Positions 18,392 to 59,160 of a DNA stretch of 64,000 bases are shown here, in pieces; position 1 is the stretch's first letter, and every line of letters begins with the position of its first letter. The DNA lies in the NCBI GenBank assembly GCA_002269645.1, contig NIVC01001260.1:39487-103486 (forward strand), read 5' to 3'. The stretch comes from Macrostomum lignano (taxonomy: Eukaryota). Below the pieces are notes generated by a model, which had not been told where the DNA came from, did not search any database, and saw only the letters and a program-made list of their open reading frames with translations. The translations under genes were made by a program, and so were the position numbers.

Positions 18392-19153
18392 ATGGCACGC
18401 CGGTACGATACTCGCACTACAACATTCTCGCCAGAGGGCCGCCTGTACCAGGTAGAATACGCCATGGAAGCTGTAGGACACGCTGGCACCTGTATGGGCA
18501 TACTGGCTCGCGATGGAATCGTACTGGCTGCTGAGAGGCGCAATATTAACAAACTGTTAGACGAGCCGGCCTTCTCTGAGAAAATCTACATTATTAATGA
18601 CGATCTGTGCGTAGCAGTGGGCGGCATCACAGCCGATGCTAATGTGCTCATCGATGAGATGCGTTTAAGCGCTCAACGCTACCTGCTGCAGTACCAGGAG
18701 CCAATGCCTGTTGAGCAGCTGGTGTCCTCTATCTGCGATATCAAGCACGCCTACACAATGTTTGGCGGCAGGCGACCATTCGGTGTCAGCATGCTGTACT
18801 CTGGCTGGGATCTGAACTACGGCTTCCAGCTCTATCAGAGCGATCCCAGCGGCAACTTCAGCGGCTGGAAGGCCACCTGTATTGGCAGCAATGCAGCCGC
18901 TGCCAACAGCATGCTGGACCAGGAGTACACAGAAAATATGAGCATTGATGAGGCGCTCAGCCTCACTATTAAAGTGTTGAACAAATCCATGACAATGAGC
19001 AAGTTATCTGCCGACAAGGTGGAGGTGGCCGTGTTCACTCGGAAAGAGGGTCACACCTATCTGAGCCTGCTGCCTCAGTCTAAAGTTGAGAAGCTCATCA
19101 AGGATCTGGAGGAGGCCGAACTAGCCAAGAAGGAGGCGGAGAAGAAAACCTAA
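18392..19153 (+). CDS. PSMA4: 20S proteasome subunit alpha type-4 (alpha3), intronless CDS
   Basis: [34 protein letters not shown] and [18 protein letters not shown]. Confidence 0.97.
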
Positions 19154-21180: not shown

Positions 21181-24100
21181 ATGCTGTCGCAGACTCTGCG
21201 CTCCATCGCACCTAATCGCCGCGGCGTGTTGTTGGCTGCCGCAGCGGTCAAGTTGAGCACATCGTCGACTTTGCGGTTAAGTTCAAATTTGCCACCGCTA
21301 GCGTCCTCGCTTTATCCTCCGATTAGTGCAGACGGTCGAAGTCTTAGTCGCGGTCCATACAGTCGCATTGAACCGGCAGATCTGCTTGTATTTGCTGATA
21401 TTATCGGTCAGAATCATGTGATCACAGATCAGTTTGAGGTTTTTGCGGCTAACACTGATTGGCCGAGAGACTGTCGAGGTCAGGGTGGTCACGTGCTGAG
21501 GCCGGGCTGCGCGGAGGAGGTGTCTGTGATATTGCGGCACTGCCAGAAGCGCAGGATTGCTGTTGTACCTCAGGGAGGCAACACCGGCCTGGCTGGAGGC
21601 GGCGTGCCCGTGTTTGACGAGCTGGTCCTGTCGCTTAGTAGAATGAATCGAGTGCTTGAGGTGTGCGGAGTTTTGTGATTCCTTCTTTTCAGAGAATCCT
21701 TGCATCCAGGACAGTGAACGTTCAAGAAATCAGTGTTCCTTTGTTGTCATTATTATTCATCCACACGTGTCTGGCCATTATTTTCACTCCTTCACTCTTC
21801 ACATCTTACACTCCATGTCTCCTTGGCTCCATTGTTCCACTCCGTGTCAGTTTGTCGCCATTATCTTCACTCCATGTCAATTTTTCGCCATTATCTAGCT
21901 TTACTCCATGTCAGTTTGTCACCACTATAATTTTTTTACTCTAAAACTATCTCAACTCAAATCGAACTCCAAGATTGACGCCGTGGCAGGCACAGTGGTT
22001 GCCGAGGCGGGCTGCGTCCTGGCCGATCTGGACTCTCACCTGTCTGAGCACGGTCTCACTGTGCCGCTAGATCTTGCCGCCAAAGGTAGCTGCCAGATTG
22101 GCGGCAATTTATCCACTAACGCGGGCGGAATTTGTGTGCTACGCTACGGTTCGCTTCGCGGCTCAGTTCGTGGATTGGAAGTTGCGCTGGCTAACGGAGA
22201 GTTGATTGACTGCGGTAGAGTTAACGAGCACGAGAGTAGGCTGGTACAGCTGATGATTGGCAGCGAAGGCACGCTGGGCGTATTGACTAAAGTGACGTTG
22301 GCGTGTCCGCCTAGGCCTGCTAATGTCCGGCTGGTTCTGATTGGCTGCGATAGCTTTCAGGTTTGCCCATGGTTGTTCGTTATTTCTTAGAAAATATAAT
22401 TCTGCGGGCACCCTGGCGCAACGCTTTCGGCGACATTGTCCTGCAACCAGCGCTGAGGCAATTCCGCTGACTCCTGAGTGCGCACATAGGGTGTACAGCG
22501 ATTTAGACCATGGGTCGGCAAACTCCGGCCCGCGGAGCCTCTCTATCCAACCCCCTCAGGTTCTTTGAAATTTCACAATAGCAATCCGGCCCGCTCAATG
22601 TTTGTCTCTTCTCAGTTCTCTCCCTCTCTTTTCTCTCCTCTCCTCTCTCCTCTAATCTATTCTCTCGTCTCCACTCCTTTCATTTCTCCTCTCATCTTGT
22701 CACACTGGGCACTTAACTGTCTGTCAAGGTCAGAGGATGACATCAAGCAGTTCCCCTGAGCCGTGGGTCAGAAGTGAAAGCCACAGATAGTCAGTCGGTC
22801 CAGCAATCCTAAGAGTTGGGGGGCCGTAGCCCAGCGGTAGCGCAGCTGCTCTGGTGTGCCAGCGACCCAGGCTCGATTCCAAGTGCAGTCACATTAATTT
22901 GGGGCTGAATTGGAATCTCGGCTTGGCTCTGCTCGTGCAATTAACGGCCTTGAGAGCCAACCCCCAAGGCGCAGTGAAGTGTACATGCCTAACGATAAAA
23001 TAAAGTTAGGGCCGCTGTACACTCCTGTGTGAGTGTGTGCCTGCGTACGTATCCGCGCGCTTGTGTGCCTGCTCAGGGGAGTCGGCGGAATGGGCAGTAA
23101 TGCCTCTCGCCGGTTGTGTGCCTATGTCGCTTAAAGTGCGCCAGGGTGCACACAACCCCCCTGCCTCTAATAAAAAAAAATCCTAAGAGTTGCCTTGAAC
23201 TCCTGGGTTGCCATTCCAGAATAGAGTTAGGGCTCAAGTTCCTCTGCATCATCCACCATGATCTTAATATCCGCAGTCGGTGCTTCATCTATTCTCGGCC
23301 GCTCGCAGTACCCTGGCCGAGACTCTGTCCGCATTTGAGATCATGGACGCCGCTACTATGTCGGCCGTGTCAGATAATCTCAAACTAAATTGTCCGCTTA
23401 GCGGCAGTAGCGAGTTCTTTGCCCTGGTTGAAACCGCCTCTTGCAATGCTAGCGGCTCGAATGATGCCGGCAAGTTGGATAGGTTTTTGGAATGCCTGGT
23501 CTCTCTCAACCATGGTGAGTAACCGTGTATAGGAGGGCACTTGATGAAGTTTATAGGGTTCGTATCTGAGAAGGATGTACGAACGTAGGATATAGATTTT
23601 AGACCAATCAATCTAGACATTTAGATAGAGATATATAGAAGATATCAGTCAAGTCCAAAGACATTGATTGATATCGGGAGAGGATTCTTATATAAAGTTA
23701 AGGGCTCTTATAAATTTGAACTTATTTATAATGATCTAAAAAACTTGATTAGAAAGATCTAAAGAAATTATTAAAGAGATCTATAGAAATTGATTAGAGA
23801 GATCTAGATACATTTATTAGAAAGATCTAGAGCCTTTGGTCAGAGAGATCGAAAGACATTGATTAGAAAGATCTAGAACCTTTGGTCAGAGAGATCTAGA
23901 GACATTGATTAGAGAGATCTAGAGACATTGATTAGAGAGATCTAGAGACATTGATTAGAGAGATCTAGAGACATTGATTAGAAAGATCTAGAACCTTTGG
24001 TCAGAGAGATCTAGAGACATTGATTAGAAGATCTAGAGACATTGATTAGAAAGATCTAGAGACATGATTAGAGAGATCTAGAGACATTGATTAGAGAGAT

Positions 24101-24940
24101 CTAGAGACATTGATTAGAAAGATCTAGAGCCTTTGGTCAGAGAGATCTAAAGACATTGATTAGAAAGATCTAGAACCTTTGGTCAGAGAGATCTAGAGAC
24201 ATTGATTAGAGAGATCTAGAGACATTGATTAGTGATATCTAGAGACTATCATTATCGATCTTCAGGTTTTATAATGAGCTACGAGCTATATGCCTCTCCA
24301 GAGACTTGATGCATATTCAAAAGCTTAAATAGCAATATAGAACCTTTTACATATATCTAGAGATTTTGTAGAGATCTATACAGATCGGTCATACATGTAG
24401 GATCAGAGGTTGATAAAAAATGCACTTAAAGTATAACAAAAACTCGTCAGAAAGCGCCGGCTCCATCGACGCCGTTATATCAAACGATTCGCGCCAATTT
24501 GGCGTCATCTGGGCGCTAAGAGAGCGCGCATTTGAGGCGCTGGTGGCCGACTGCGGACCGGCCGGTGGCTACATGCAGTTTGATGCGTCAGTGTCCGACA
24601 GGCTGGACATGCAGCGGCTTGTGCTGGCCACCAGGGCAGAGTTCGGCCAGCTCGATTGCGTCATTCGCGTGGCCGGTTTTGGTCACCTTGGCGACGGTAA
24701 TTTGCACCTGGTGGTGACGGCGGATCCAGCCGGGGCTGCCGGCTGCGGCCTGTGGCCCCGCGTGGAGGCCTTCGTCTACGGCTGGCTGTCCCGGCGGCGG
24801 GGCTCCATCAGCGCTGAGCACGGCCTGGGCTGGAAGCGGAGCGCGTACCTGGGTGAGGGCTGGCGGACAGGCAGACAGACAGACAGACACACAGACAGGC
24901 AGACAGACAGACAGACAGATAGACAGGCAGACAGACAGAC

Positions 24941-24975
<35 letters not shown>

Positions 24976-25389
24976 TAGACAGACAGACAGACAGACAGAC
25001 ACTAAGAGAGACACTAAGACAGACACTAAGACAGACACTAAGACATACTAAGAGAGACACTAAGACAGACACTAAGACAGACACTAAGACATACTAAGAC
25101 AGACACTAAGAGAGACACTAAGACAGACACTAAGACAGACACTAAGACATACTAAGACAGACACTAAGAGAGACACTAAGACAGACACTAAGACAGATAC
25201 TAAGACAGATACTAAGACAGACACTAAGACAGACACAGTCAGCCAGTCAGAGCACTATTTATGCCATCCGCAGGTCACTGCAAGAGCCCAACAGCTGTAT
25301 CCGTGATGGCGGGCATCAAGCGACTGCTGGATCCCCAAGGGATTCTCAATCCGTACAAAGTTCTGCCACCCTCGGCACTATCATATTGA
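21181..25389 (+). CDS. D2HGDH: Mitochondrial D-2-hydroxyglutarate dehydrogenase (exons 21181-21660, 21974-22360, 23277-23514, 24451-24852, 25274-25389; ~540 aa)
   Basis: VVPQGGNTGLAGGGVPVFDE, KGSCQIGGNLSTNAGG, IGSEGTLG, GHLGDGNLH, GSISAEHGLG, ILNPYKVLP. All splice phases are consistent; N-terminus is transit-peptide-like. Confidence 0.95.
22507..22600 (+). mobile_element. Possible hAT-family MITE terminus in D2HGDH intron 2
   Basis: CATGGGTCGGCAAACTCCGGCCCGCGG resembles hAT/Charlie ends (CAGGGGTCGGCAAAC..CGGCCCGC); matching opposite end not found. Confidence 0.4.
22819..23178 (+). mobile_element. Full-length tRNA-derived SINE (~360 bp) with A-rich tail and 14-bp TSD
   Basis: Pol III A-box-like TAGCCCAGCGGTAG, B-box-like GCTCGATTCC and TAATAAAAAAAAA tail. 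TSD AATCCTAAGAGTTG at 22805-22818 and 23179-23192. Confidence 0.85.
23600..24245. repeat. ~23-bp minisatellite (GAGATCTAGAGACATTGATTAGA)n in D2HGDH intron 3
   Basis: Direct, degenerate at the 5' end. Confidence 0.9.
24865..25235. repeat. (GACA)n grading into 12-bp (GACAGACACTAA)n in D2HGDH intron 4
   Basis: Direct. Confidence 0.95.
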
Positions 25390-27896: not shown

Positions 27897-28666
27897 ATTT
27901 TTATTGCCTTAACTCAGAATTCCAGCCTAAGGCTGCCATGTACATTTCAGAGGCTAAATGTACATTATTTCTGAACCTGTTTACGCCTGCAAGCTTGGCC
28001 TTCTAAACTTATCAAAGTCATTTCAGCTGCCTTTTTTATAAAATAGCTTCTGTATTCGTCTTTGCTACTGAACTGATAGTAGAAAGCTGTTTTACTAAGC
28101 ATACAGCCCATCTAGTTATTTTAGTATCTGTGGCCAGAGTTTATAATGAAATCTGATAAACAACAGAAAAAGCATCGCTTCAGCTGAGACACTACCGTCA
28201 GCCCCCCTGAACCACTTTCTACCCCCATCAATATTGTGTACTTTTTCGTCCTTTTTACACAACATGCCGACATCCTTTGTTGGATTGCAAACTCTAGTTA
28301 AACTGTCTCTAGTTCATTCTTAAACCTTTTTATTGAAGAGTTTTCAACTTTTTAAACAGTTAGTCAACGTCTTCTGCTTCCTGTGCGCTTCGATTTAAAA
28401 TCCGGCTATAAGCACAGCTATTTATCTATAATTATACTATTTATGTATTTTTATCTTACATTCAATGTAAGATTGGTGGCGAAATGTACACTGACACTGA
28501 TAAAATAAAGTTAATAATTTTAAGCTTCGATTTCTAATCATAAACGCGTACGACTAAGTTTGTACTTAAATTCGTTATTTATTTTTGCAACGCAACTGTT
28601 GCACAAATTACGCAACGCTATACTATTCAGGTTCCGAAAAGACAGCCAGAATCCAGTAAACTCCAC

Positions 28667-29805
28667 TCAGATAAGCATCTCGATTTCCTTGACTGAATAG
28701 TAGTAGCCAAATGGAAAGTACCAGTTGATTCCCACGGCGAACTCTTCCGTGTGCAGAGCAGCGGGTGGATAAAAGTACAAACCGTTTGGATTCGTCCTGT
28801 GGCACGCCGAGTACCACCAACTTCCGCGGAACTTCTTGGCGCAGTTCCGCATCGATACGTCATTGTCCTTGTCGTGGGTGCTGAACTTCATCCCGTTGCA
28901 CCAGGTCATGCAGTCTCCCAGACTCGGGTGGCTGCCATGGAAACCGGAGACATTCAACCGGAACTTGTCGGCCTCGCTGGCCACGGAGAAGCTGGAGTAG
29001 TCGGCCCAGAGCTCCGTGCCATTCCACAGCTTCATTCGCATGCGAAGTGCTCGACCAGACGGCCAGGTCAGAGAGTGCACAGCTCGCAGACCTGCAGTTG
29101 TCAAGCACAGCTCAATGCTGAGCAGCTCACAGCCACAGGAGGCCAGCGCTATCAAAAAGTGCATCAATACCGTCATGACCGCACTGCACTGCACTCACCG
29201 AGCCAGTGGTTCGTGTGGGCTCCCTCTCCGAAGCCGGCTGCGTACTCGGTCCAGTTGCGATAGAAGTCTGTCGAGTTGTCCACCCGACGCTGGATGCTGA
29301 TCCAGCAGTCGCTGAGTGACGTCACAAACACCTGCAGTGAGGCATTGAGAGCTGCGGTCAGGCAAGTGCTGTCAGTTACCTGGCTGTCAGGTGAGTCAGC
29401 GCACGCTTGCTACTCACCCTGATGCAGCACGGAGACTGGTGAGTGTGAGGCGTCAGTCTGCGACACACAGCGCCACTTCGGTTTGCTGGAATGCGAATGA
29501 GCTCAGCAGGGTGAGCAGCTTCATCAGGTTTAAGGCATCGAGCATGCAGCCAAGACTCACTCACCCACGATGCACTGGGGCTGCTGAGCACCGTCTCGAG
29601 GGATGAAGACCAGCAGCTGGTGAGCGAGCAGGTGCTTGGCAGCCTGTGCAGCGCACTGCAGCACATCGCTGGCTTGGCTGATGGAGGAGACGAGGAAGTG
29701 GCGGACTCGACCGCCCGACCAGCTGCTGCTGTGCACCTCATTGAGGATGACAGCAGCAGAAGTTGTTGTCAAGGCAACTGTTAGGAATGCCAGCAGTTGA
29801 TTCAT
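28667..29805 (-). CDS. FReD paralogue C, apparently intact
   Basis: Exons 29805-29565, 29485-29418, 29331-29199, 29091-28667; FSTHDKDND, GSWWYSAC, TNPNGLY. Confidence 0.88.
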
Positions 29806-30535
29806 TGTTGGGAAATCGAAAACGTGTTTGGCTGAAGGGTGCGATTTTGCGCTGCAGCTGCAGTCTACGCTCGAAGTCCTTGGAGTTCTGCAGCTCTTCG
29901 GAGCTTCCTGGATGGAGTCCCGTTTTTAACAGACAATTTGCTGCCATTCGCTGCGTGTTCTACTAACATCCTTGTTTGTTATTGGCCCTCTTCTTGTGCC
30001 AAGAATATTTTATCAGTGATATGCGCTGTTTTGCTGACACTGTTGGATCTTTACTTTTTATTGATAATTTTTAGCTCTTCTGTCCTACTCGAAGCCAGTG
30101 AAGCTGTCATGATAGAAACCTTTTATGACAAGCGTAGCAATTCGTTATAGGAGCATCTGGCCTCTGAAGTGCATTTTTTATTAGTTTACTCGTATTACTT
30201 GTTTTTTTAGCAATCATCATATTCTACAGAATTGATAATTTTTTACATCTGTTAGTCGTGCAGCTGTGTAACCTCCTGCTGTCAACAACCCTTTCTCACT
30301 GGCAGTTTTGACTGGCATTGCGCCGTAGGCTTTTTCTTCTCGCCTGGTATTTCTCAAGCCTTATTATTTTTCTTTATCAAATCGACTTGACAAATTGCGC
30401 AAATTTAGGAATAAATATAATGACAGTAGCCAGCAGTTTAAGGACTTGTTTCCCTTCAAACGCTTGTCCGTCTCTACAAGATGTTTTGCTACAGCAAATA
30501 AAATATACAAGAAAGACGATAATTAGTATTCAAAT

Positions 30536-30813
30536 TCAGCTCCTGTAACTATAATTCCGCAAAACCAGCAGCGCAGCGGCTTGGCGACAGGTTGATTCAG
30601 CAGCACCGAGGCAGCTGCTATTCGCTTTGCTGGTGCTCTCATTAGGCATGGACTTTTTCCTGTCCGATCTGCTTGGTGAAGCTGCAGCCTCTCTGTTGCT
30701 ACTGTTGTTAGTAGTCTCTCCAGGTCGCAAAGCTGTGCTAATTCTTCTGCCAATTTTTATCAGTCCGTCCTTGATGCTGGATCGACGTTTTACAGTTATT
30801 GGTGTTGAGGCTG
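30536..30813 (-). pseudogene. 5'-truncated, internally deleted copy of the disordered-protein gene at 35911-37004
   Basis: STPITVKRRSSIKDGLIKIGRRISTALRPG...KKSMPNESTS is near-identical to the 36667-36480 region; its 5' half is replaced by the LINE tail. Confidence 0.85.
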
Positions 30814-33572
30814 CTTGACTTGACTTTGACTTAGCTGCAGGGCTGTTCCGGAGGGGACACAGTGGGAAGGCGCAGACGCCCATTCCGCTGATCCCTGAAC
30901 GGCCGACGCGTCGCTATGGACGAAGGGTTGGCGCCGCCCAGGGAGGTCTCTGGTGTCGCAGCAGCTATGGTGCTCTCTGGAAAGGAGAGTTCAGCCCTGC
31001 GGGTGGCCCGGAGGTAGCGCATGATGCTCTCTGGCTCTCATGCTATCTGGACCTGGAACAACGTCGGAGTAGCGTTGTCTAAGCTGATTAAAATTTTCGG
31101 TTTTGCTCGCTTCAGTAATTGATGTGTGTGGCCCGAGGTAAGTGAGTCTGGCTCGCATGAAGGCGGGACAGATGCTGACGAAATGTTCAGCGGTTTCGTC
31201 ACCTGAGTTGCAAAAACTGCAGATGACGTTGGTGGTATTGCCCTGCAAGTACTGGTGCCTCGAAAAGCAGTCGTGACCTGAGAGGGTCATGTTGGCAGCC
31301 CGGATGTCTCTTTACGAGAGGCGCAAGAGGAGCTTCCGGAGCTGGTGAGAGGGCTGAGGGACAGCGCCTCTGGATTGCCTGCATGGAGTACAGTTCGACC
31401 AGGTCGAGCGGTGCTGGGTCCTGATCAACGCTTTGATGCGCGAGTCGATGACACAGCCAGGAATTGGGACAAGGGGTTCGGGACAGAGAGGAGCCGGAGG
31501 CACCAACTTTTGCAAGGGCGTCAGCCAACTCATTCCCTCGGATCCCCACATGCCCCGGAACCCACTTAAGGGTGATTTTGTTGGTGGAACCCAACATGTT
31601 GATGAGTTTGATACAGTCGAGGACTGTAGCAGAATTGACGCTGCAGCCACTGATGACGTGCAAGGCAGCTTGGCTGTCCGAATGGAAAATGATGTTCTAC
31701 CGGTTACGCCAGTGGCGAGAAGCTCTGCATTGCAAGAGCTGATGGCGAGAACTTCATTTTGGAAGACACTGGAGTTGACCCCAGTGTACTGAGCGTTGGT
31801 TGCGATGACCCGCCCGTTCAGGAAGATCCCAACACCAAAGCCGGTGTTGACTGACTGCTTAGAACCGTCGGTGTAGCAATGGAGCTCACCAGGGTTCCAG
31901 TGGTCATTGATGGTATCGCGCGGGTCGATAGCTACAGAGTAGCGTTGTCTCAGGTTGAGCGTTGAGGCAGTGCCATCGGTGAAGACGCGATTGGCCTGAC
32001 ACTCGTTGAGAAAGTTGAGGCACAGGTCGCTATGCGGGACGAGGTTCCGCTTAGCAGGTGCCCTCATGTAGAGGAATTCGACGCCGGCATCAAGTAAACA
32101 CCGCGTCGCTCTAGCCGCCTCACACCTGACGAAGAGGTCGAGTGGCGGTAGAACAAGGAAGGCCCCAGCAAAGGGTGTGGGCCTGGTGGCATTGCAGATA
32201 AGCCTACACGCCTTGCCCTAGATCGTGTTGAGCAAATCTGCATGGCTTTTGACCTGGGTGGCGCTGACCCAGACAACATAAGCGTACCTAATGGCAGGTC
32301 TAACCACGGAAGTGTAGATCCACCAAATACGCTTTGGGGATAAACCCCATGAAGTGCCAAGTGCCCACCGAGCTGGGCCAGGATGGCTGAGGCACGCTTG
32401 GCTTTTGCTTTCACGTGGAAGGACCAGTTGAGCCGGTGGTCTAGTATAACCCCGGGACATCTGGTCTGTTGCGAGAAGACAATATCTCTGCCGCATAGCT
32501 GCAGAGGCCTTATTCAGCGTATTCGATTGGTGAACATAATGGCAACAGCTTTGGGGCTCAGAGAGTTCCAAACCGTTGTCATTGGCCCAGGATTCTGCTT
32601 TGCGGATAAAGCTCTGCATCAGATCCCTGAGCGTGCTGGGGGACGGCCCAGCCACAATGGCAGTGACGTCGTCAGCATACCCGACTTTGAAGACGGGATC
32701 AGGTCGGGAGTCGCCCAGAAGAGCGTCCATGACCAGGTTTCAGAGCGTCGGGGTGAGGAATCCGCCTTGGGGTCCACCCTTACAGACTCTGGTGGAGGCA
32801 GTTTGCCCTAGGAGTTGGGCAGTGACCGTACGGTTAGAGATCATGTACATGATCCACCGTATGAGGGTAGCGTGAGCTTTGCGGTTTTGATGGGCCCTCT
32901 GAAACGCTTCAAAGAAAACGTTGTCTAAGGCGCCAACAATGTCGAGAAAAAGAGCCAGGGCGTAACCGTCACCCAGTACCGCCCGTTCAATCTTCTCGAC
33001 TATCGCATGCAGGGCGCTGTCAGTCGACCTCCCGGTACGGAAGGCGTGCTGATGATTGCTGAGGGGCATCGCTGTCAGCTCGCAAGAAAGCAGCCGCCAG
33101 AGAATAAGCCTCTCAGTGAGCTTAAGCATTGCTTATGTTAAGCTAATTGGCCTGAAGGCCTTGACGCTCTGGTAGTCACCCTTCCCAGGTTTGGGAATGA
33201 AGACTACCCGAGCTTCAGTCCAGCACTTGGGCACATACCCCAGCTGGATAGAGGCCCGCTGGATAAATTGCGGGTAAGTCTAAGAACGAGGGTATCTTGG
33301 CTACTTCACGGAGAACAGGGTAGATACCGTCGGGACCAGGAGATTAGAAAAGCTTGAAGGCTCTGACTGCACGAGTGATTTAATCTTGTTGGGTTGGGTT
33401 CCGATCTATAGCAGTGGGTACCCTCGGGAAGAATGTACTCCTGGGTCCTCCTGGTCCTCCAGAGAATCCTCAGGGTCCCGGTCTTCATGCACTGTGATGG
33501 AGGCTTTTGGCCTTCCGCCTGAGTTTCCCCAGCTCCGGGTTCCACCACGGCGCCGAGGTCTTGCCTCTGTAG
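30814..33572 (-). mobile_element. 5'-truncated, decayed non-LTR retrotransposon with RT, RNase H and C-terminal CCHC (I-group, LOA/R1-like)
   Basis: PWWNPEL, VFIPKPGK..KAFRPISLT, FLDIVGALD, PQGG, GYADD, RNase H YTDGSK..FQNEV, CSFCNSGDETAEHFVSICP. Stops and frameshifts; short (TCAAG)n 3' tail; APE endonuclease absent. Confidence 0.92.
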
Positions 33573-33769
33573 CCGGCTATAAGCACAACTATTTATCTAT
33601 AATTATGCTATTTATTTTTAATCTTATATTTAATGTAAGATTGGTGGCAAAATGTACACTGATAATATATATATTTCTTAATTTTAGGCTTCGGTTTCTA
33701 ATCATCGTAAGCACGTACGGCTAATTTTCGTATTTGGATTCGCTATTTACTCTCGTATTAACGAGCTAT

Positions 33770-35001
33770 TTATTTATTTATTTCGATGCACCCGTTGCAC
33801 AAATTACGCAACGCTTTAGTATTCGGGTTCCGAAAAGATAGCCAGAATCCAGTAAACTCCACTCTGACGAGCATCTCGATTTCCTTGACTGAATAGTAGT
33901 AGCCAAATGGAAAGTACCAGTTGATTCCCACGGCGAACTCTTCCGTGTGCAGAGCAGCGGGTGGATAAAAGTACAAACCGTTTGGATTCGTCCTGTGGCA
34001 CGCCGAGTACCTCCAACTTCCGCGAAACTGTTTGGTGCAGTTCCGCATCGATGCGTGATTGTCCTTGTCTTGGGTGCTGAACTTCATGCCATTGTGCTAG
34101 GCCATGCAGTCTCCAACGCTAGGGTGGCACGCGGAGAACCCCGAGATGCTCAGCCGGAACTTGTCGGCCTCGCTGGCCACGGAGAAGCTGGAGTAGTCGG
34201 CCCAGAGCTCCGTGCCATTCCACAGCCTCATTCGCATGCGAAGTGCTCGACCAGACGGCCAGGTCAGAGAGTGCACAGCTCGCAGACCTGCAGTTGTCAA
34301 GCACAGCTCAATGCTGAGCAGCTCACAGCCACAGGAGGCCAGCGCTATCAAAAAGTGCATCAATACCGTCATGACCGCACTGCACTGCACTCACCGAGCC
34401 AGTGGTTCGTGTGGGCTCCCTCTCCGAAGCCGGCTGCGTACTCGGTCCAGTTGCGATAGAAGTCTGTCGAGTTGTCCACCCGACGCTGGATGCTGATCCA
34501 GCAGTCGCTGAGTGACGTCACAAACACCTGCAGTGAGGCATTGAGAGCTGCGGTCAGGCAAGTGCTGTCAGTTACCTGGCTGTCAGGTGAGTCAGTGCAC
34601 GCTTGCTACTCACCCTGATGCAGCACGGAGACTGGTGAGTGTGAGGCGTCAGTCTGCGACACACAGCGCCACTTCGGTTTGCTGGAATGAGAATGAGCTC
34701 AGCTGGGTGAGCAGCTTCATCAGGTTTAAGGCATCGAGCATGCAGCCAGGACTCACTCACCCACGATGCACTGGGGCTGCTGAGCACCGTCTCGAGGGAT
34801 GAAGACCAGCAGCTGGTGAGCGAGCAGGTGCTTGGCAGCCTGTGCAGCGCACTGCAGCACATCGCTGGCTTGGTTGATGGAGGAGACGAAGAAGTGGCGG
34901 ACTCGACCGCCCGACCAGCTGCTGCTGTGCACCTCATTGAGGATGACAGCAGCAGAAGTTGTTGTCAAGGCAACTGTTAGGAATGCCAGCATTTGATTCA
35001 T
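33770..35001 (-). pseudogene. FReD paralogue D with in-frame TAG (34099-34097, where paralogue C has Trp), WW>WR change and loss of the normal stop (extended tail)
   Basis: Exons 35001-34761, 34681-34614, 34527-34395, 34287 onward; reads ...DCMA*HNGMKFSTQDKDN... Confidence 0.85.
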
Positions 35002-35910
35002 TGTTGGGAAATCGAAAACGTGTTTGGCTGAAGGGTGCGAATTTGCGCTGCAGCTGCAGTCTACGCTCGAAGTCCTTGGAGTTCTGCAGCTCTTCGGAGC
35101 TTGCTGGAATCCCGTTTTTATCAGAATTTGCTGCCATTCAATGCGCGTTCAGCTAACATCCTTGTGATTGGTCTGCAGCCCTTGGCCTTCTTCTTTTGGC
35201 AGGAATTTTTTTCAGTAATGCGCCATGTTGACACTGCTGGCTGCTAACTTCTTGTTTCTACCATTTATTTTTTTGGTCTCCGTCTTACTCTTGGCAATTT
35301 GACGCTGTCGATAATAGCTGTTACCTGTTATTTTTTTTTACAAGAGTAGCAGTTTTTATACATGCATGTACCTGGTCCCCTTTTTGTGTATTTATCGTGT
35401 TTTCTAGAATTTATCGGATGTTATATTCTATCAACCCCCCTGCTTTCAAAAATCTCTTTTTCATTTGCAGTTTTGACTGGCGCCCTGTACTCTATGTTCT
35501 TGCCTCTCAGTTGTCAAGTTTTCATATCCACTTGCCTTATGATTTCGAGAATTGAAGAACCCCATGACAGCTAGTATTTGTTTAAAGACTTCTTTCTCTT
35601 CAGACGCTTTTCACGTCACGTTTCTAACGGATCTGTTGCAACAGCAAATAAAAGATACAAGAAATGTTATTATTTAATGAGCACTAAGAATCGTTAAATT
35701 GTTATTATAAAATCTTGTAAAATTAGAGGTCTACTATAAGTAGTCAAGAGGAGCATATCTACTTACTTTTGCCTATTACGAATCTCGTTATTAAATTATA
35801 TACTCTTTTGGCTTGCTAGGCCAAATGTTCGCGAATGGGTTTTTTACGAGTGTAGAATTAAAAGCAGATTCAGCTCTGGATACTTTGATTCCGCAAGATC
35901 AGTTTCAATC

Positions 35911-37004
35911 TCACACCATCGTGCGTCGTCTCAGTGGCGTCTTATCCGACGTCATCGCTCGGGCCGAGGCGGCGGCGGCAGCTGCGACGGCTAAAGTCGC
36001 CGCGGACTCCTGATGCTGCTGCAGCCTTGGGGCTGGTGTCGGCTTGAGTGCAGTCGGACTTCTGAAAAAAGGATTGAATCAAGTCAACTTGGTAAAGAAT
36101 TTGTGCTGCGTTCCAATTGCATCGGATAGATAGATGAAGTCTAAAGTCCTCATGCGAGCTAAATTGTGGGCGCCGTGGCTCCGGAAACGCCTCTTAGGGA
36201 AGCAAACAACGCTGAGGTAATTCTGCCCATTCTGCTGATTCTTGAGCGCCGATAGTGTACACACACTCACACAGGGTGTACATTGGCCCCGACTCTCTTA
36301 TCGTCAGGCATGTACACACTCTGTGCCTTGAGAGTTGGCCATCATGGGTGCAAGTCGCGCGCGTTTACCGCTAACGCCATTCGCTACCCAACCTGTGCGT
36401 CATCGCCGATGTACAGTCTCAAGCCCCATCAATCTCACCCGGCAACGCCCTGGCGATAGGTTGATTCGGTTGCAGCACCGGGGCTGGTGCTCTCATTAGG
36501 CATGGACTTTTTTCTGTCCGATCTGCTTGGTGAAGCTGCAGCCTCTCTGTTGCTACTGTTGTTAGTAGTCTCTCCAGGTCGCAAAGCTGTGCTAATTCTT
36601 CTGCCAATTTTTATCAGTCCGTCCTTGATGCTGGATCGACGTTTAACAGTTATTGGCGTTGACGCTGGTGTTGCAGCTTTCACTGGAGATCGCATGGAAT
36701 GTTCAGTCTTGTTGAACTCGGAGCTGCTAGTGGTTGCCCCGATGGCGATGGCCGCGGCAGATCCGAACCGTCTTGGAGCCGCAAGTTTGGAAGTACTTTG
36801 GCCGACGTTCAAGTCAGTGACTGACGGCGATTGTCGCTGCCGCAACTGCTGCTGCTGCTGCGCCAGGAAACCCAACCGATTGTACTTTTCTATCAGGTAT
36901 TGAACCCTTGGTGGGGTGGAGTATTCTTCGTCTTCGCGTCGCTGGTCGATTAGTCGGTTCGGCTGCTGCAGCTGTGGCGGTTCTGGCAGTTTCCTTCCAG
37001 TCAT
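35911..37004 (-). CDS. Orphan low-complexity/disordered protein (exons 37004-36439, 36061-35911; ~238 aa)
   Basis: Donor GG|GTGAGA at 36438 and acceptor TTTTTTCAG ending 36062 give a phase-2 join, continuing SPTALKPTPAPRLQQHQ...RRRTMV*. Confidence 0.65.
36190..36345 (-). mobile_element. Diverged partial second copy of the SINE at 22819-23178
   Basis: GCCAACTCTCAAGGCACAGAGTGTGTACATGCCTGACGATAAG...TGTACACCCTGTGTGAGTGTGTG...GAATGGGCAG aligns by eye with the SINE body. Confidence 0.7.
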
Positions 37005-37673: not shown

Positions 37674-40194
37674 TCAAGCTCCATCCTTAGCCGAGTCTGT
37701 ATTAAAAAAGTTAACAACATCGTCGTACAGCACTTTGGCAGCGTTGTATCCCCACACGAAGTCCAGGTGGTTGTAGTCGGACACGTTCCTGTCTCGCGCC
37801 AGAGTGTGCTTAATCTGCGGCAGCAGCAGGCTGAAGTCTGTGGGATCCGCCAGCCAGTCCTTCTCGCCATGGTACACCGCCAGAGGCACCCGGATGTTGT
37901 ACAGATTGTACTGAGGCGGCGTGGGCTGGCCGTACCGGCGCATATTCTCAGTCTTGCCGTAGTCGTACTTCTGAAATCGCTTGTGCTGCACAGCCTGCGC
38001 GTAGTGCACCAGATTCATGGCCGAGGTGCCAGCCGGCGTGTGGCTGATGTACACGGGCAGGCGGGTCATGTTGGTGTAGCGACAGTCAAATCCGCACAGC
38101 AGGAAAATCACATTGCTGCACAGAGGCGACAGAGCATCGCCGCACACGGCTAAGGAGAGGAACTTCAGTAGGCGGGTGGTTGGCAGAAATTCTCCGTGAC
38201 CGAAGAAGTCGATGGCATCGGCGAGGCTGGTGGCCAGAGGAGCGATCAGCCGGATGGGGCTCTCGATGTAGCCGACGGTGGCAACTGGGGCGAGCAGAGC
38301 GGCCGCTCTCACCAGCGAGTTGAGGGTGCGGTTCTGACTCCAGGCTGAGGGCGGGACAGTTTTTGAGTTTGACTGTGTGAAGATGGTGGGAGAAGACTGT
38401 GTGAAAATGGTGGGAGAAGACTGTGTGAAGATGGTTGAAGAGGACTGTGTGAAGATGTTTGAAGAAGACTGTGTGACGATGCATGGTTTGTAGAAGGCTA
38501 TGTGAAGATGGTTGAAGAGGACTGTGTGAAGATGGTTGAAGAGGACTGTGTGAAGATGGTTGAAGAGGACTGTGTGAAGATGGTTGAAGAGGACTGTGTG
38601 AAGATGGTTGAAGAGGACTGTGTGAAGATGGTTGAAGAGGACTGTGTGAAGATGGCTTGAAGAAGACTGTGTGAAGATGGTTGAAGAGGACTGTGTGAAG
38701 ATGGTTGAAGAGGACTGTGTGAAGATGGTTGAAGAGGACTGTGTGAAGATGGTTGAAGAGGACTGTGTGAAGATGGCTTGAAGAAGACTGTGTGAAGATG
38801 GTTGAAGAGGACTGTGTGAAGATGGCTTGAAGAAGACTGTGTGAAGATGGTTGAAGAGGACTGTGTGAAGATGGTTGAAGAGGACTGTGTGAAGATGGCT
38901 TGAAGAAGACTGTGTGAAGATGGTGGAGAAGACTGTGTGAAGATGGTGGGAGAAGACTGTGTGAAGATGGTGGGAGAAGACTGTGTGAAGATGGTTGAAG
39001 AGGACTGTGTGAAGATGGCTTGAAGAAGACTATGTGAAGATGGTGGGAGAATACTGTGTGAAAATGGTGGCAGAAGACTGTGTGAAGATGGTTGAAGAGG
39101 ACTGTGTGAAGATGGCTTGAAGAAGACTATGTGAAGATGGTGGGAGAATACTGTGTGAAAATGGTGGCAGAAGACTGTGTGAAGATGGTTGAAGAGAACT
39201 GTGTGAAGATGGCTTGAAGAAGACTGTGTGAAGATGGTGGGAGAAGACTGTGTGAAGATGGTTGAAGAGGACTGTGTGAATATGGTACAGATTCGTCCCG
39301 GTGATTTCTTACCTGCCAGAGCAATCTCTGTTCCCTGAGAATGGCCAACATAATAAACCTGTTTAGCTCCAGTCTCCCCAATAACCGCATCAATCATTGC
39401 TGGCAGATCGAACTCCGCCATCTGGTCCCAGGAGAACTTCCAGAACTCCAGCTGGTGTGGACTTAAGCGCACGTGCGCCTTGCTGTAGGTGTTGCCGCGC
39501 ACGTTGCCAAGCCAGACGTCGTAGCCGGCCTCGCTGAGTCTGTAGGCCAGCGATTGGTTGGCCAGGTTGGACACCCAGGTGAAGCCGCTGTCCAGCAGGC
39601 CGTGCACCAGCAGAACCGGAGTTGGATGCCGTTGAATGGCTGGCATGATTCGTTGAACTCCCAGAATGTAACCGTCAGCTGTTGTGACATTGTAGCTTTT
39701 CACTTTGAAGCCTTTGTCGCTGATTACCTGCATGGCAAACACATTGGTAGTCAATCAGTAGTGTGTCCATCATCATGGTCAGACACAATCAGTAGTGTGT
39801 CCATCATCATGGTCAGACACAATCAGTAGTGTGTCCATCATCACGGTCAGACACAATCAGTAGTGTGTCCATCATCACGGTCAGACACAATCAGTAGTGT
39901 GTCCATCATCACGGTCAGACACAATCAGTAGTGTGTCCACCATCATGCACAGACACACTCAGTAGTCCATCAAGCCGGATCACGCACCTGTTCAATAGTC
40001 TGGAACACCTCCGGATCGATGTGCTTCGGCGGCGGCCATTCGTCACCGCAGCCGCCAGGAAACCTGGCCGCTGTCGCGTAGAAACCTGGCGGCACCAGAC
40101 TGCCCACCATGGTGGTGACGGACAGAGACAGCAGATAGAGACACAGAATCGCTCCCATGGCTGCTAGGACCAGTGCAATCTGCAAGCGGCCCAT
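37674..40194 (-). CDS. Acid lipase (LIPA/gastric lipase family; exons 40194-39988, 39727-39313, 38344-37674; ~430 aa; alternative upstream ATG at 40263)
   Basis: VTTADGYIL, LVHGLLDS, WLGNVRGNTYS, catalytic GHSQG, GEKDWLAD, YNHLDF; splice phases consistent. Confidence 0.93.
38355..39285. repeat. 24/25-bp minisatellite (GACTGTGTGAAGATGGTTGAAGAG)n filling lipase intron 2
   Basis: Direct. Confidence 0.96.
39750..39965. repeat. 34-bp repeat (TCAGTAGTGTGTCCATCATCATGGTCAGACACAA)n in lipase intron 1
   Basis: About 6 copies. Confidence 0.92.
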
Positions 40195-40364: not shown

Positions 40365-42709
40365 CTAAACAGATACTGCATGAGTTGCTTGCCTGGCAAT
40401 GCGAACCGCGTCTTTATCAGTCACCTTTGGACTGTCGGCCCAACCCCCGGTGCTAAAAATGTTCTGTCCAAAGCAAGTTTGTGACTTTTCTTCTCCAAAA
40501 AGCGACTGTTTACTGGATTTAAACTGTATCAAGTTGACATGCGCATATGACTCTGCAACAGGCAGCTTGGGTATTTGACTAAAATATTTATCTGGGTATC
40601 TGCTTTGTGTGAATTCTGCTTCGCGCATGTTTCTAGCTTCAGATAGGGAGCCAACTAAATAGCTGCACAAATGGATGGCAGATGCACGGTTAGAACCCAG
40701 CTGTCAGCGAGAGGATGTTATAGATTGGTTTCCATGTTGCTAAAGCCCCTGGTGCTAAAGCAACTGTTGCTAAAGCCCCTGGTGTTAAAGCCCCTGGTGC
40801 TAAAGCCCCTGGTGCTAAAGCCCCTGGTGCTAAAGTCCCTGGTGTTAAAGCCCTGGTTCTAAAGCCCCTGGTGCTAAAGCCCTGGTGCTAAAGCCCCTGG
40901 TGCTAAAGCCCCTGCTGCTAAAGCCCCTGGTGCTAAAGCCCCTGGTGCTAAAGCCCCTGGTGCTAAAGCCCCTGGTGCTAAAGCCCCTGGTGCTAAAGCC
41001 CCTGGTGCTAAAGCCCCTGGTGCTAAAGCCCCTGGTGCTAAAGCCCCTGGTGCTAAAGCCCCTGGTGCTAAAGCCCCTGGTGCTAAAGCCCCTGGTGCTA
41101 AAGCCCCTGGTGCTAAAGCCCCTGGTGCTAAAGCCCCTGGTGCTAAAGCCCCTGGTGCTAAAGCCCCTGGTGCTAAAGCCCCTGGTGCTAAAGCCCCTGG
41201 TGCTAAAGCCCCTGGTGCTAAAGCCCCTGGTGCTAAAGCCCCTGGTGCTAAAGCCCCTGGTGCTAAAGCCCCTGGTGCTAAAGCCCCTTGGTGCTAAAGC
41301 CCCTGGTGCTAAAGCCCCTGCTGCTAAAGCCCCTTGGTGCTAAAGCCCCTGGTGCTTAAGTCCCTGGTGCTAAAGCAACTGTTGCTAAAGCCCCTGGTGT
41401 TAAAGCCCCTGGTGCTAAAGTCCCTGGTGTTAAAGCCCTGGTTCTAAAGCCCCTGGTGCTAAAGCCCTGGTGCTAAAGCCCTGGTGCTAAAGCCCCTGGT
41501 GCTAAAGCCCCTGGTGCTAAAGCCCCTGGTGCTAAAGCCCCTGGTGCTAAAGCCCCTGGTGCTAAAGCCCCTGGTGCTAAAGCCCCTGGTGCTAAAGCCC
41601 CTGGTGCTAAAGCCCCTGGTGCTAAAGCCCCTGGTGCTAAAGCCCCTGGTGCTAAAGCCCCTGGTGCTAAAGCCCCTGGTGCTAAAGCCCCTGGTGCTAA
41701 AGCCCCTGGTGCTAAAGCCCCTGGTGCTAAAGCCCCTGGTGCTAAAGCCCCTGGTGCTAAAGCCCCTGGTGCTAAAGCCCCTGGTGCTAAAGCAACTGTT
41801 GCTAAAGCCCCTGGTGTTAAAGCCCCTGGTGCTAAAGTCCCTGGTGTTAAAGCCCTGGTTCTAAAGCCCCTGGTGCTAAAGCCCTGGTGCTAAAGCCCCT
41901 GGTTCTAAAGCCCCTGGTGCTAAAGCCCCTGCTGCTAAAGCCCCTGGTGCTAAAGCCCCTGGTGCTAAAGCCCCTGGTGCTAAAGCCCCTGGTGCTAAAG
42001 CCCCTGGTGCTAAAGCCCCTGGTGCTAAAGCCCCTTGGTGCTAAAGCCCCTTGGTGCTAAAGCCCCTTGGTGCTAAAGCCCCTGGTGCTAAAGCCCCTGG
42101 TGATAAAGCCCCTTGGTGCTAAAGCCCCTGGTGCTAAAGTCCCTGGTGTTAAAGCCCTGGTTCTAAAGCCCCTGGTGCTAAAGTCCCTGGTGTTAAAGCC
42201 CTGGTTCTAAAGCCCCTGGTGCTAAAGCCCCTGGTGCTAAAGCCCCTGCTGCTAAAGCCCCTGGTGCTAAAGCCCCTGCTGCTAAAGCCCCTGGTGCTAA
42301 AGCCCCTGGTGCTAAAGCCCCTGGTGCTAAAGCCCCTGGTGCTAAAGCCCCTGGTGCTAAAGCCCCTGGTGCTAAAGCCCCTGGTGCTAAAGCCCCTGCT
42401 GCTAAAGCCCCTGGTGCTAAAGCCCCTGGTGCTAAAGCCCCTGCTGCTAAAGCCCCTGGTGCTAAAGCCCCTGGTGCTAAAGCAACTGGTGCTGGAGCTC
42501 CATTTGCAATTTGAAATTCCAGAAGGTGAAATACTAGGAATTTTATTGCTAAAAAAACTAAAAGCTTCTAACATTCATATAATGGGCTTCAATACCCTAT
42601 TGCACTACAAGAATTTAGACTTAAAAAATGACTCACAATTTCCATGGAGGCGTCATCGTCAAAGAAATATTTCCCCAAAGCAGTCCTTTTTATAATTCGC
42701 AACGTGTCT
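40365..42709 (-). CDS. Candidate exons of an unidentified gene (42709-42637 DTLRIIKRTALGKYFFDDDASMEI; 40662-40365 YLVGSLSEARNMREAEF...HAVSV*)
   Basis: Open frames bounded by AG and GTGAGT/TAG. The connecting exon and its donor are uncertain; no family recognised. Confidence 0.3.
40736..42490. repeat. 15-bp minisatellite (AAGCCCCTGGTGCTA)n, ~1.75 kb
   Basis: Direct; explains the LKPLV ORFs. Confidence 0.98.
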
Positions 42710-51141: not shown

Positions 51142-51184
<43 letters not shown>

Positions 51185-51352
51185 TTGAGTGAGTGGGTGA
51201 CTGACTGACTGACTGACTGACTGACTGACTTGAGTGAGTGGGTGACTGACTGACTGACTGACTGACTGACTGACTGACTGACTGACTGACTGACTGACTG
51301 ACTGACTGACTGACTGACTGACTGACTTGAGTGAGTGGGTGACTGACTGACT

Positions 51353-51395
<43 letters not shown>

Positions 51396-53616: not shown

Positions 53617-59160
<5,544 letters not shown>

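What the first reader, a model, noticed from the sequence alone, without database searches (positions are those of the whole stretch)
28402..36667. LINE sits at the exact junction of a 2.4-3.1 kb duplication, like a giant TSD that copied a FReD gene
Seen: X1 (28402-30813), then the LINE (30814-33572), then X2 (33573-36667). X2 starts at the base where the truncated LINE 5' end stops (CCGGCTATAAG, also the X1 start). X1 ends at the LINE tail, in mid-gene, while X2 continues into the intact gene. There is no short TSD and no LINE copies at the outer flanks. Established: target-primed reverse transcription normally gives 5-20 bp TSDs. Inference: a widely staggered second nick or insertion-coupled repair duplicated kilobases and expanded the lectin family; the alternative is tandem duplication followed by insertion with deletion.
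Basis: partly seen in the sequence, partly recalled or inferred. Interest (0 to 1): 0.7.

Follow-up and report, generated by a model that had tools for sequence, protein, structure and literature searches.

The report
Kilobase gene duplication flanking one LINE
A single, old, 5'-truncated LINE retrotransposon sits exactly between two tandem copies of a 2.4-3.1 kb segment holding a whole fibrinogen-related lectin gene; this most likely arose when the LINE inserted, a rare outcome already known from human cells and a green alga.

Summary
X1 (28402-30813) and X2 (33573-36667) are direct copies that start and end at the same bases, with no shared sequence beyond. Between them lies one minus-strand R1/I-group LINE (30814-33572).

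The LINE's 3' end is complete: an independent relative ends with the same terminus and AAGTC-type tail. Its 5' end is a true truncation just after the endonuclease region. There is no short TSD, no other LINE fragment in the window, and no sign of an RNA-mediated copy.

X contains a whole 4-exon FReD gene. It is intact in X1 and carries a nonsense mutation in X2. The "mid-gene" break lies in a different, orphan ORF.

X1/X2 identity is a mosaic of gene-converted blocks (98-100%) and old sequence (K 0.13-0.27). LINE decay (9 stops, 5 frameshifts; d about 0.11) predicts K about 0.21, so the LINE is not detectably younger than the duplication.

Best explanation: one insertion-coupled tandem duplication, a "giant TSD" (about 0.6). 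A tandem duplication followed by LINE insertion with a junction-spanning deletion gives the same picture (about 0.2). No empty site or sister genome could be found.

The mechanism is already described for human L1 and Chlamydomonas Dualen, so this is a new member of a known kind.

The parts
28402..30813 (.). X1: the copy downstream of the LINE in LINE-sense orientation (2412 bp). It holds a truncated piece of the gene-B exon, a diverged intergenic stretch, a whole FReD gene and 265 bp of 3' flank.
   Evidence: collinear with X2 and shares both end points to the base.
30814..33572 (-). 5'-truncated, decayed R1/I-group LINE (2759 bp). It has the post-endonuclease linker (PWWNPEL), RT, RNase H, a C-terminal CCHC motif, a stop at 30991-30993 and a 3' UTR. 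It carries 9 in-frame stops and 5 frameshifts.
   Evidence: The closest named relative is a Macrostomum lignano sequence (73% over 41% of the query); other hits are R1-type elements with Exo_endo_phos_2, RVT_1 and RNase_H.
30814..30835 (-). Canonical LINE 3' terminus and tail: ...CTGCAGCTAAGTCAAAGTCAAGTCAAG, directly abutting X1.
   Evidence: the independent relative L001 ends ...CCCTGCAGCTAAGTCAAAGTAAGTCAGTAAGTCAA and is then unrelated. DNA alignment of L001 reaches window 30816; the motif is unique in the window.
33573..36667 (.). X2: the copy upstream of the LINE in LINE-sense orientation (3095 bp). It is continuous on its right with the rest of the gene-B ORF.
28667..29805 (-). FReD gene in X1, intact. 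Exons 29805-29565, 29485-29418, 29379-29199 and 29091-28667; introns 79, 38 and 107 nt; 304 aa with a signal-peptide-like N-terminus.
   Evidence: GT-AG splice sites; Fibrinogen_C E = 2.5e-50 covering profile positions 28-218 of 221.
33770..35001 (-). FReD gene in X2, same exon structure. It has a premature stop at 34097-34099 (W to stop, GDCMA*HNG), has lost its normal stop (33863-33865), and GSWW has become GSWR.
36435..37004 (-). 'Gene B': a 189-aa low-complexity ORF with no homologue anywhere. The first breakpoint (36667/36668) lies inside it.
   Evidence: No Pfam hit; no homologues.
30536..30883 (-). X1 copy of the gene-B exon piece (30629-30813, 97.8% identical to X2), embedded in a 115-aa ORF whose ATG lies in the LINE 3' UTR.
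   Evidence: 4 differences, all synonymous third positions; the adjacent indels are in frame (18 bp, 3 bp).
28401..28402 (.). Second breakpoint in the ancestral sequence (5'-junction site). It is in AT-rich DNA 265 bp past the FReD stop codon and 181 bp past its AATAAA signal.
28997..29716 (.). Block that is 99-100% identical in all four FReD paralogues, introns included (X2 34193-34912; copy C about 4747-5466; copy D about 6477-7196). This is a gene-conversion tract and is useless as a clock.
35905..36438 (.). X2-specific segment of about 530 bp, absent from X1, flanked by the 10-bp direct repeat TCAATCTCAC.

Best explanation
One retrotransposition event both inserted the LINE and duplicated 2.4-3.1 kb of target DNA. 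It is a kilobase-scale target-site duplication, also called an insertion-coupled tandem duplication.

In LINE-sense (minus-strand) order the ancestral locus was a-X-c:
- a is the 5' part of the gene-B ORF.
- X is the rest of that exon, plus an intergenic stretch, the whole FReD gene and 265 bp of its 3' flank.
- c is the downstream DNA.

Inferred steps:
1. The LINE endonuclease nicked the bottom strand inside the gene-B exon, at the site equivalent to 36667/36668.
2. The AAGTC-type tail of the LINE RNA was reverse-transcribed from that 3'-OH.
3. The cDNA, incomplete at its 5' end, was joined to a DNA end about 2.5-3 kb downstream (28401/28402) instead of to a second nick a few bases away.
4. 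That distant end was either a distant nick on the same duplex or, more plausibly, a break or nascent strand end on the sister chromatid or at a replication fork.
5. Fill-in then left a-X-LINE-X-c.

Because the hit exon was itself duplicated, the upstream copy of gene B stayed whole, so the event could be neutral and reach fixation.

Later events: gene conversion homogenised blocks of X1, X2 and the other FReD paralogues; the rest diverged; X2's FReD acquired a nonsense mutation; and the LINE decayed.

Shown: the structure, the exact breakpoints, the complete LINE 3' end, the 5' truncation, the absence of other LINE copies, and the age compatibility.
Inferred: the single-event origin and the nature of the second DNA end.
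For: - Base-exact coincidence of both LINE ends with both ends of the duplication, with no extra bases and no short TSD.
- The LINE 3' end is the family's canonical terminus plus a short-repeat tail, as shown by the independent relative L001. This is what target-primed reverse transcription predicts. It would be a coincidence for a randomly captured or templated fragment.
- LINE homology runs to within 3 bp of the 5' junction, which is an ordinary 5' truncation.
- No LINE fragment exists at the outer flanks or anywhere else in the window.
- Introns are retained, the polyA signal lies 181 bp inside X, and there is no tail at X1's outer end. The copy was therefore made at the DNA level.
- LINE decay (9 stops, 5 frameshifts in 857 codons) gives d = 0.107 (95% CI 0.049-0.203). 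This predicts a pairwise K of 0.21 (0.10-0.41). Observed K in non-converted X segments is 0.13-0.27. The likelihood ratio for same age against a later insertion is 1.6-5.3.
- Precedent for kilobase TSDs or LINE-bridged tandem duplications exists: PMC5223499, PMC9977147, PMC7058536 and PMC11702581.
Against: - No empty site (a-X-c) could be found in another strain, species or paralogous locus. The organism and its close relatives are not in the searchable collections.
- The structure alone cannot be told apart from a tandem duplication followed by LINE insertion with a deletion across the junction.
- The clock is weak. Gene conversion from X and from other paralogues distorts X1/X2 divergence. 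The intergenic alignment is gappy. The LINE age rests on 9 stop codons and on assuming an intact progenitor.
- FReD genes in this window also duplicated without this LINE: copies C and D form a head-to-head pair. LINE-independent duplication is therefore active at this locus.
Confidence: 0.6

Rival explanations
1. Two events. First, an earlier LINE-independent tandem duplication of a larger unit: [a b c][a b c]. Later, a LINE insertion whose 5' end was joined upstream with loss of the DNA between (an insertion-associated deletion). That deletion removed c of the first copy and a of the second, leaving a-b-LINE-b-c.
For: - This gives exactly the observed structure, including the intact LINE 3' junction, the 5' truncation and the lack of a TSD.
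- LINE insertion-associated deletions without a TSD are well documented and appear commoner than large duplications. One study reports 90 such deletions in tumours (PMC7058536).
- The FReD family here duplicates by other routes too: copies C and D.
- The intergenic part of X looks older (K about 0.26) than the LINE point estimate would need.
Against: - It needs two rare events at the same spot.
- LINE decay is as high as expected for the age of the duplication. The likelihood ratio of 1.6-5.3 favours equal age.
- There is no remnant of a second 'a' or 'c'.
Confidence: 0.2
2. A replication-based or end-joining tandem duplication (template switching, or sister-chromatid end joining). A LINE sequence served only as filler at the junction. 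It was either copied from another genomic LINE copy or captured as free cDNA at a double-strand break, without endonuclease-dependent priming.
For: - Tandem-duplication junctions often carry inserted filler.
- The endonuclease's target preference for this family is unknown, so a cleavage motif at 36667/36668 could not be checked.
Against: - The filler ends exactly at the family's canonical 3' terminus with its short-repeat tail.
- A templated copy or a random capture would be expected to end at an arbitrary internal position, or to include flanking DNA from the donor copy.
Confidence: 0.1
3. Other origins: unequal crossing-over between two LINE copies flanking X; an RNA-mediated copy (3' transduction); a later precise insertion at an existing junction; or an assembly artefact that joined two haplotypes in tandem.
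For: In each of these, the LINE and the repeat are adjacent.
Against: - There are no LINE fragments at the outer flanks or elsewhere in the window.
- X1 keeps all three introns and has no tail at its distal end, and its polyA signal is internal.
- Hitting the one junction position out of about 5.5 kb without making a TSD has a chance of about 2e-4 (inference).
- There are no N bases, and the copies differ by 12-25% and many indels outside the converted blocks, far more than alleles would. The joint is a clean LINE with a canonical end.
Confidence: 0.05

Closest known systems
Kilobase target-site duplications of de novo human L1 insertions in cultured cells (Servant et al. 2017, PMC5223499; earlier Gilbert 2002/2005 and Symer 2002 as cited there)
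   Same: A single LINE is flanked by direct copies of more than 1 kb of target DNA. It has an intact 3' end and a variable 5' truncation. The authors attribute it to a second-strand break far from the first nick and note that it can duplicate exons.
   Different: [quoted passage not shown] This is an R1/I-group element with a short-repeat tail in an invertebrate (probably flatworm) germline. It is old, apparently fixed, and copies a complete gene. No repair defect can be inferred here.
Dualen LINE insertions with long flanking duplications in Chlamydomonas mutation-accumulation lines (Lopez-Cortegano et al. 2023, PMC9977147)
   Same: Spontaneous, heritable LINE insertions flanked by duplications of median length 900 bp, interpreted as very long TSDs.
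   Different: Dualen has two endonucleases (RLE and APE), which the authors suggest cause the long TSDs. The element here belongs to an APE-only group: its relative L002 has Exo_endo_phos_2. Only one case is seen here, so no family-wide habit is shown.
L1-bridged tandem duplications in human tumours and L1-expressing cells (Rodriguez-Martin et al. 2020, PMC7058536; Mendez-Dorantes et al. 2024 preprint, PMC11702581)
   Same: One LINE insertion lies at the joint of a direct tandem duplication, with the endonuclease or poly(A) side at one breakpoint. The model is that the cDNA end joins a break on the sister chromatid downstream of the integration site.
   Different: Those events are somatic and range from small tandem duplications at the insertion site through 64 kb to 22.6 Mb. 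None is evolutionary or shown to create a retained gene copy.
LINE insertion-associated target deletions (reported in PMC7058536 and PMC11702581)
   Same: No TSD, an intact 3' junction, and a 5' end joined at a distance. This is the mechanism of the main rival explanation.
   Different: A deletion alone cannot create a duplicate. It needs a pre-existing tandem duplication spanning the site.

Membership tests
LINE insertion-coupled tandem duplication (kilobase TSD) | Direct copies of target DNA on both sides of a single LINE, with copy ends coinciding with LINE ends | tested here: met
   X1 and X2 share start and end bases, with 0 bp of homology beyond and nothing between them but the LINE.
LINE insertion-coupled tandem duplication (kilobase TSD) | The LINE 3' end is complete, with its tail, at the junction (hallmark of target-primed reverse transcription) | tested here: met
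   same terminus and AAGTC-type tail as the independent relative L001, ending at 30814.
LINE insertion-coupled tandem duplication (kilobase TSD) | No additional short TSD and no second LINE copy at the outer flanks | tested here: met
LINE insertion-coupled tandem duplication (kilobase TSD) | The LINE and the duplication are the same age | tested here: inconclusive
   predicted K 0.21 (0.10-0.41) against observed 0.13-0.27. This is compatible, but the likelihood ratio is only 1.6-5.3 and gene conversion confounds the clock.
LINE insertion-coupled tandem duplication (kilobase TSD) | An empty site with a single X and no LINE exists in an allele or outgroup | not testable with these tools
   no close relative of this genome is in the searchable collections.
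LINE insertion-coupled tandem duplication (kilobase TSD) | The element's endonuclease cleavage motif is present at the 3' junction | not testable with these tools
   The target preference of this LINE family is unknown. Only two 3' junctions are available (window and L001).
R1/I-group non-LTR retrotransposon (APE type with RNase H) | Reverse transcriptase and RNase H domains in ORF2 order, a C-terminal Cys/His motif, and relatives carrying an APE endonuclease | tested here: met
   RVT_1, RNase_H; CSFCNSGDETAEHFVSICP; relatives with Exo_endo_phos_2; one hit named R1. The endonuclease itself is missing here because of the 5' truncation. No clade-level phylogeny was made.
Fibrinogen-related domain (FReD) proteins | Fibrinogen_C domain above Pfam's threshold in a complete reading frame | tested here: met
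   E = 2.5e-50, 171.8 bits (cut-off 22), profile positions 28-218 of 221 in the spliced X1 model. X2 has a premature stop. Lectin activity was not tested.
Unequal crossing-over (NAHR) between flanking repeats | Copies of the mediating repeat at the outer borders of the duplication | tested here: not met
   no LINE-related DNA or protein similarity outside 30814-33572.
3' transduction or retrocopy | The copy ends in a tail at its distal end, coincides with a transcript end, and spliced copies lose their introns | tested here: not met
   all three introns are kept, there is no tail at 28401/28402, and the AATAAA signal lies 181 bp inside X.

The most novel reading that the evidence does not exclude
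This LINE family, or LINE integration in this lineage generally, might habitually complete integration at distant DNA ends, giving kilobase TSDs. It would then be a systematic engine of tandem gene duplication. The duplication would also shield hit exons from disruption and could create chimeric ORFs, such as the LINE-3'UTR::gene-B' ORF at 30536-30883, whose only differences from the parent exon are synonymous.
Probability: 0.08. Interest if true: 0.75.

Novelty: new member of a known kind. Interest (0 to 1): 0.45.

Why it matters
Kilobase duplications made by LINE integration have been seen mainly as fresh events: in repair-deficient cultured cells, in tumours, and in algal mutation-accumulation lines. 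Old, retained germline examples that copy a complete, still-intact protein-coding gene are rarely documented in animals.

If the single-event reading is right, this locus shows that such events can survive long enough to seed gene-family growth. Here the family is an innate-immunity-type lectin family. It also shows that a giant TSD can neutralise an insertion into an exon, because the exon is duplicated along with it. That would add a DNA-level route, distinct from retrocopies and from recombination between repeats, by which retrotransposons create new genes.

With one locus and no empty site, it remains a well-supported candidate rather than a demonstration.

Tried and rejected
1. Orthologous or allelic loci. 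The lipase ORF next to X2 has its best database hit at only 49% identity, to Fasciola. Gene B has no hit at all in either the word-indexed or the exhaustive search. Exact-protein look-ups for gene B and the lipase ORF are not on record. No empty site could therefore be examined.
2. X1/X2 identity as a simple clock. Rejected because a 720-bp block is identical in all four paralogues and X-specific blocks alternate between 99% and 84-88%. In 28877-28996, X1 is closer to copy C than to X2, so even some 'divergent' parts are conversion products.
3. A first LINE reading path drawn by eye put the 5' 330 bp in the wrong frame. It was corrected with homologues.
4. The 4-of-4 synonymous differences as proof of selection on the X1 gene-B fragment. 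Tempered: if only the X2 lineage is constrained, the chance is still about 0.15. Three of the four differences lie in the last 25 bp, as expected at the unconverted edge of a conversion tract.
5. NAHR between flanking LINEs, 3' transduction or retrocopy, later precise insertion, and haplotype misassembly were all rejected.
6. Tandem repeats or a recognisable transposon as the source of X2's extra 530 bp. None was found, only a flanking 10-bp direct repeat. Insertion in X2 versus deletion in X1 is unresolved.
7. Microhomology at the 5' junction and an endonuclease motif at the 3' junction. Neither can be assessed without same-family copies.
Full report
OBSERVATION

- X1 is 28402-30813 (2412 bp) and X2 is 33573-36667 (3095 bp). 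They are collinear direct repeats.
- Both begin CCGGCTATAAG and both end ...GCTG.
- No base of similarity continues to the left of the two starts or to the right of the two ends.
- The 2759 bp between them (30814-33572) is unique in the window. There are no N bases.

Identity along X is very uneven:

| Segment (X1 coordinates) | Content | Identity or K2P |
|---|---|---|
| 28402-28669 | FReD 3' flank | 88.1%, K2P 0.13 |
| 28700-28819 | X-specific block | 99.2% |
| 28820-28996 | FReD exon, X-specific | 83.6%, K2P 0.19 |
| 28997-29945 | block shared with other paralogues | 98.7% |
| 29946-30628 | intergenic | short collinear patches of 73-83%; K2P about 0.26 in a gappy global alignment |
| 30629-30813 | gene-B exon piece | 97.8% |

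X2 also carries about 530 bp that X1 lacks. This segment (35905-36438) is bounded by the 10-bp direct repeat TCAATCTCAC.

WHAT THE PARTS ARE

Everything relevant is on the minus strand.

The LINE.
- The insert is a non-LTR retrotransposon. Pfam finds RVT_1 and RNase_H.
- The three-frame translation shows the post-endonuclease linker (APWWNPELGKLRRK), the PGPDGI motif, the RT core (FIPKPGK ... YADD), RNase H (SDSQAAL ... WVPGHVGIRGNELAD) and a C-terminal Cys/His motif. The ORF stops at 30991-30993 and a 177-nt 3' UTR follows.
- The closest named relative is a Macrostomum lignano UniRef entry (73% identity over 41% of the query). Other hits are R1/I-group elements carrying Exo_endo_phos_2, RVT_1 and RNase_H.
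- The neighbouring lipase's best hit is a trematode at 49%.
- Together these suggest, but do not prove, a macrostomid or other flatworm source.

The 3' junction.
- A metagenome contig carrying a 60%-identical relative (L001) aligns at the DNA level down to window 30816.
- L001 ends ...CCCTGCAGCTAAGTCAAAGTAAGTCAGTAAGTCAA and then becomes unrelated.
- The window element ends ...CCCTGCAGCTAAGTCAAAGTCAAGTCAAG and then X1 begins.
- The element therefore has its complete canonical terminus and short-repeat tail exactly at the X1 border.

The 5' junction.
- The element's first residues (RGKTSAPWWNPELGKLRRKAK) align to the segment just after the endonuclease domain of relative L002 (58%, E = 9e-10).
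- LINE homology thus reaches within 3 bp of 33572. The junction is an ordinary 5' truncation that removed ORF1 and the endonuclease.

The FReD gene.
- X contains a whole gene. A GT-AG model has exons 29805-29565, 29485-29418, 29379-29199 and 29091-28667, with introns of 79, 38 and 107 nt.
- It gives an intact 304-aa protein with a signal-peptide-like start and a Fibrinogen_C domain at E = 2.5e-50.
- X2 has the same structure but a premature stop at 34097-34099 (GDCMA*HNG) and has lost its normal stop.

Gene B.
- The gene cut by the right-hand breakpoint is not the FReD gene. It is a 189-aa low-complexity ORF at 36435-37004, called 'gene B' here. It lies downstream of an acid-lipase gene.
- It has no Pfam domain and no homologue in either protein search.
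- The X1 copy of its last 185 bp differs from X2 at four positions, all synonymous third positions. The two indels just downstream are in frame.
- This argues that the frame is coding in at least one lineage. It is only weak evidence for constraint on the X1 fragment (see 'tried and rejected').

GENE CONVERSION

The window holds two more FReD paralogues. Copy C is at 4432-5555 (-) and has an in-frame stop and a small deletion. Copy D is at 6427-7520 (+) and has a different first exon.

A 720-bp block (X1 28997-29716) is 99-100% identical in all four copies, introns included. The 3' halves of the genes are only about 55-70% identical between the X lineage and C or D. In 28877-28996, X1 is closer to C than to X2.

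The locus is therefore subject to concerted evolution. High-identity blocks say nothing about age, and some low-identity blocks may be imports from other paralogues.

EXPLANATIONS REJECTED

| Explanation | Why it fails |
|---|---|
| Unequal crossing-over between flanking LINE copies | No LINE-related DNA or protein similarity outside 30814-33572 |
| RNA-mediated copy (3' transduction or retrocopy) | X1 keeps all three introns; no tail at its distal end; the AATAAA signal is 181 bp inside X |
| Later, independent LINE insertion landing precisely on an existing junction | Must hit one position in about 5.5 kb and make no TSD, roughly 2e-4 (inference) |
| Haplotype misassembly | No N bases; copies differ by 12-25% and many indels outside converted blocks; the joint is a clean LINE with a canonical end |
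| Templated or captured filler at a replication-type junction | Disfavoured, because the filler ends exactly at the family's terminus |

THE TWO SURVIVING MODELS

Model A is a single event. Target-primed reverse transcription started at a nick in the gene-B exon. The cDNA's far end was joined to a DNA end 2.5-3 kb downstream, so X was duplicated around the LINE.

Model B is two events. An earlier tandem duplication [a b c][a b c] was followed by a LINE insertion whose associated deletion removed c of the first copy and a of the second. This leaves a-b-LINE-b-c, the same picture as model A.

Only timing or an empty allele can separate the two.

TIMING

- With the homologue-checked reading path, the LINE has 9 in-frame stops and 5 frameshifts in 857 codons.
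- With 3.3% of random substitutions creating a stop in this sequence, that gives d = 0.107 substitutions per site (95% CI 0.049-0.203).
- The predicted pairwise K for duplicates of the same age is therefore 0.21 (0.10-0.41).
- Observed K in non-homogenised X segments is 0.13-0.27.
- The likelihood ratio for equal age against insertion at a uniformly distributed later time is 1.6-5.3. This is modest support for model A.
- Combined with parsimony and rough base rates (my inference), I put model A at about 0.6, model B at about 0.2, filler models at about 0.1 and the rest at about 0.05.

COMPARISON WITH WHAT IS KNOWN

The kind of event is already described.
- In NER-deficient human cells, 57-91% of de novo L1 inserts have TSDs over 100 bp, and 38% of those exceed 1 kb. 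In HeLa cells fewer than 10% exceed 100 bp. The authors note that such TSDs can duplicate exons and can later recombine (PMC5223499).
- In Chlamydomonas mutation-accumulation lines, Dualen LINE insertions carry flanking duplications of median length 900 bp (PMC9977147).
- In tumours, a single L1 event bridges a 22.6-Mb tandem duplication, explained by the cDNA joining a break on the sister chromatid (PMC7058536).
- L1-expressing cells show small tandem duplications at insertion sites (PMC11702581).

What this locus adds is a different LINE group (APE-type R1/I-like with a short-repeat tail), a probable flatworm germline, an old and apparently retained event, and a complete gene in the duplicated unit. 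It is a new member of a known kind.

VERDICT

One detail is corrected (the broken gene is an orphan ORF, not the FReD gene). One claim is qualified (the family 'expansion' currently amounts to one intact copy and one nonsense-bearing copy). Interest is moderate.

Noticed in passing
window 28997-29716, 34193-34912, about 4747-5466, about 6477-7196: A 720-bp block covering exons 1-3, all three introns and the first part of exon 4 is 99-100% identical in all four FReD paralogues. Their 3' halves (the rest of the Fibrinogen_C domain) are only about 55-70% identical between lineages. The pattern is concerted evolution of the 5' part with a diversified 3' part.
   Followed up: partly
window 4432-5555 (-) and 6427-7520 (+): FReD copies C and D form a head-to-head inverted pair; 4676-5489 against 7267-6454 is 99.1% identical. 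C has an in-frame stop (CH*TNPNG) and a small deletion. D reads intact but has a different first exon and signal peptide. No LINE is associated with this pair.
   Followed up: partly
window 30536-30883 (-) and 36435-37004 (-): The orphan ORF 'gene B' has no homologue among 1.84 billion representatives. Its truncated X1 copy differs only at four synonymous sites and has in-frame indels. It sits in a 115-aa ORF that starts with an ATG inside the LINE 3' UTR, so it is a possible chimeric gene.
   Followed up: partly
window 35905-36438: An X2-specific segment of about 530 bp is bounded by the 10-bp direct repeat TCAATCTCAC (at 35905 and 36429). The stop codon of gene B lies in the second repeat copy. 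Insertion in X2 versus deletion in X1 is not resolved.
   Followed up: partly
whole window, e.g. 984-1950 (ACAG)n, 50480-52284 (ACTG)n, 53973-54755 (TCTA)n, 2441-3951 (20-mer), 45558-47417 (34-mer), 40738-42493 (15-mer): The density of long micro- and minisatellite arrays is extraordinary: about 30 arrays of roughly 0.2-1.9 kb lie between and inside ordinary genes. The 15-mer array would encode (AKAPG)n in one frame. AGAC-type tetranucleotide arrays occur in both orientations (984-1950 against 55384-55647).
   Followed up: no
window 37674-39754 (-): This is an acid-lipase gene (Abhydro_lipase plus Abhydrolase_1). A 24-bp minisatellite of about 38 units (38371-39286) lies inside a long ORF between its N- and C-terminal coding parts. 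Whether it is intronic or coding is unknown.
   Followed up: no
L001 (JGI metagenome 3300038379, contig Ga0394873_0189874) 2431-2525: An environmental contig carries a relative of the LINE (60% amino-acid identity) with the same 3' terminus and AAGTC-type tail. This implies the family, and probably related host animals, occur in that sample.
   Followed up: partly
window 18392-19153 (+), 21181-25097 (+): Context genes: a single-ORF proteasome alpha subunit and a multi-exon FAD-linked oxidase (FAD_binding_4 plus FAD-oxidase_C). This shows that the window is ordinary eukaryotic gene space with very short introns.
   Followed up: no
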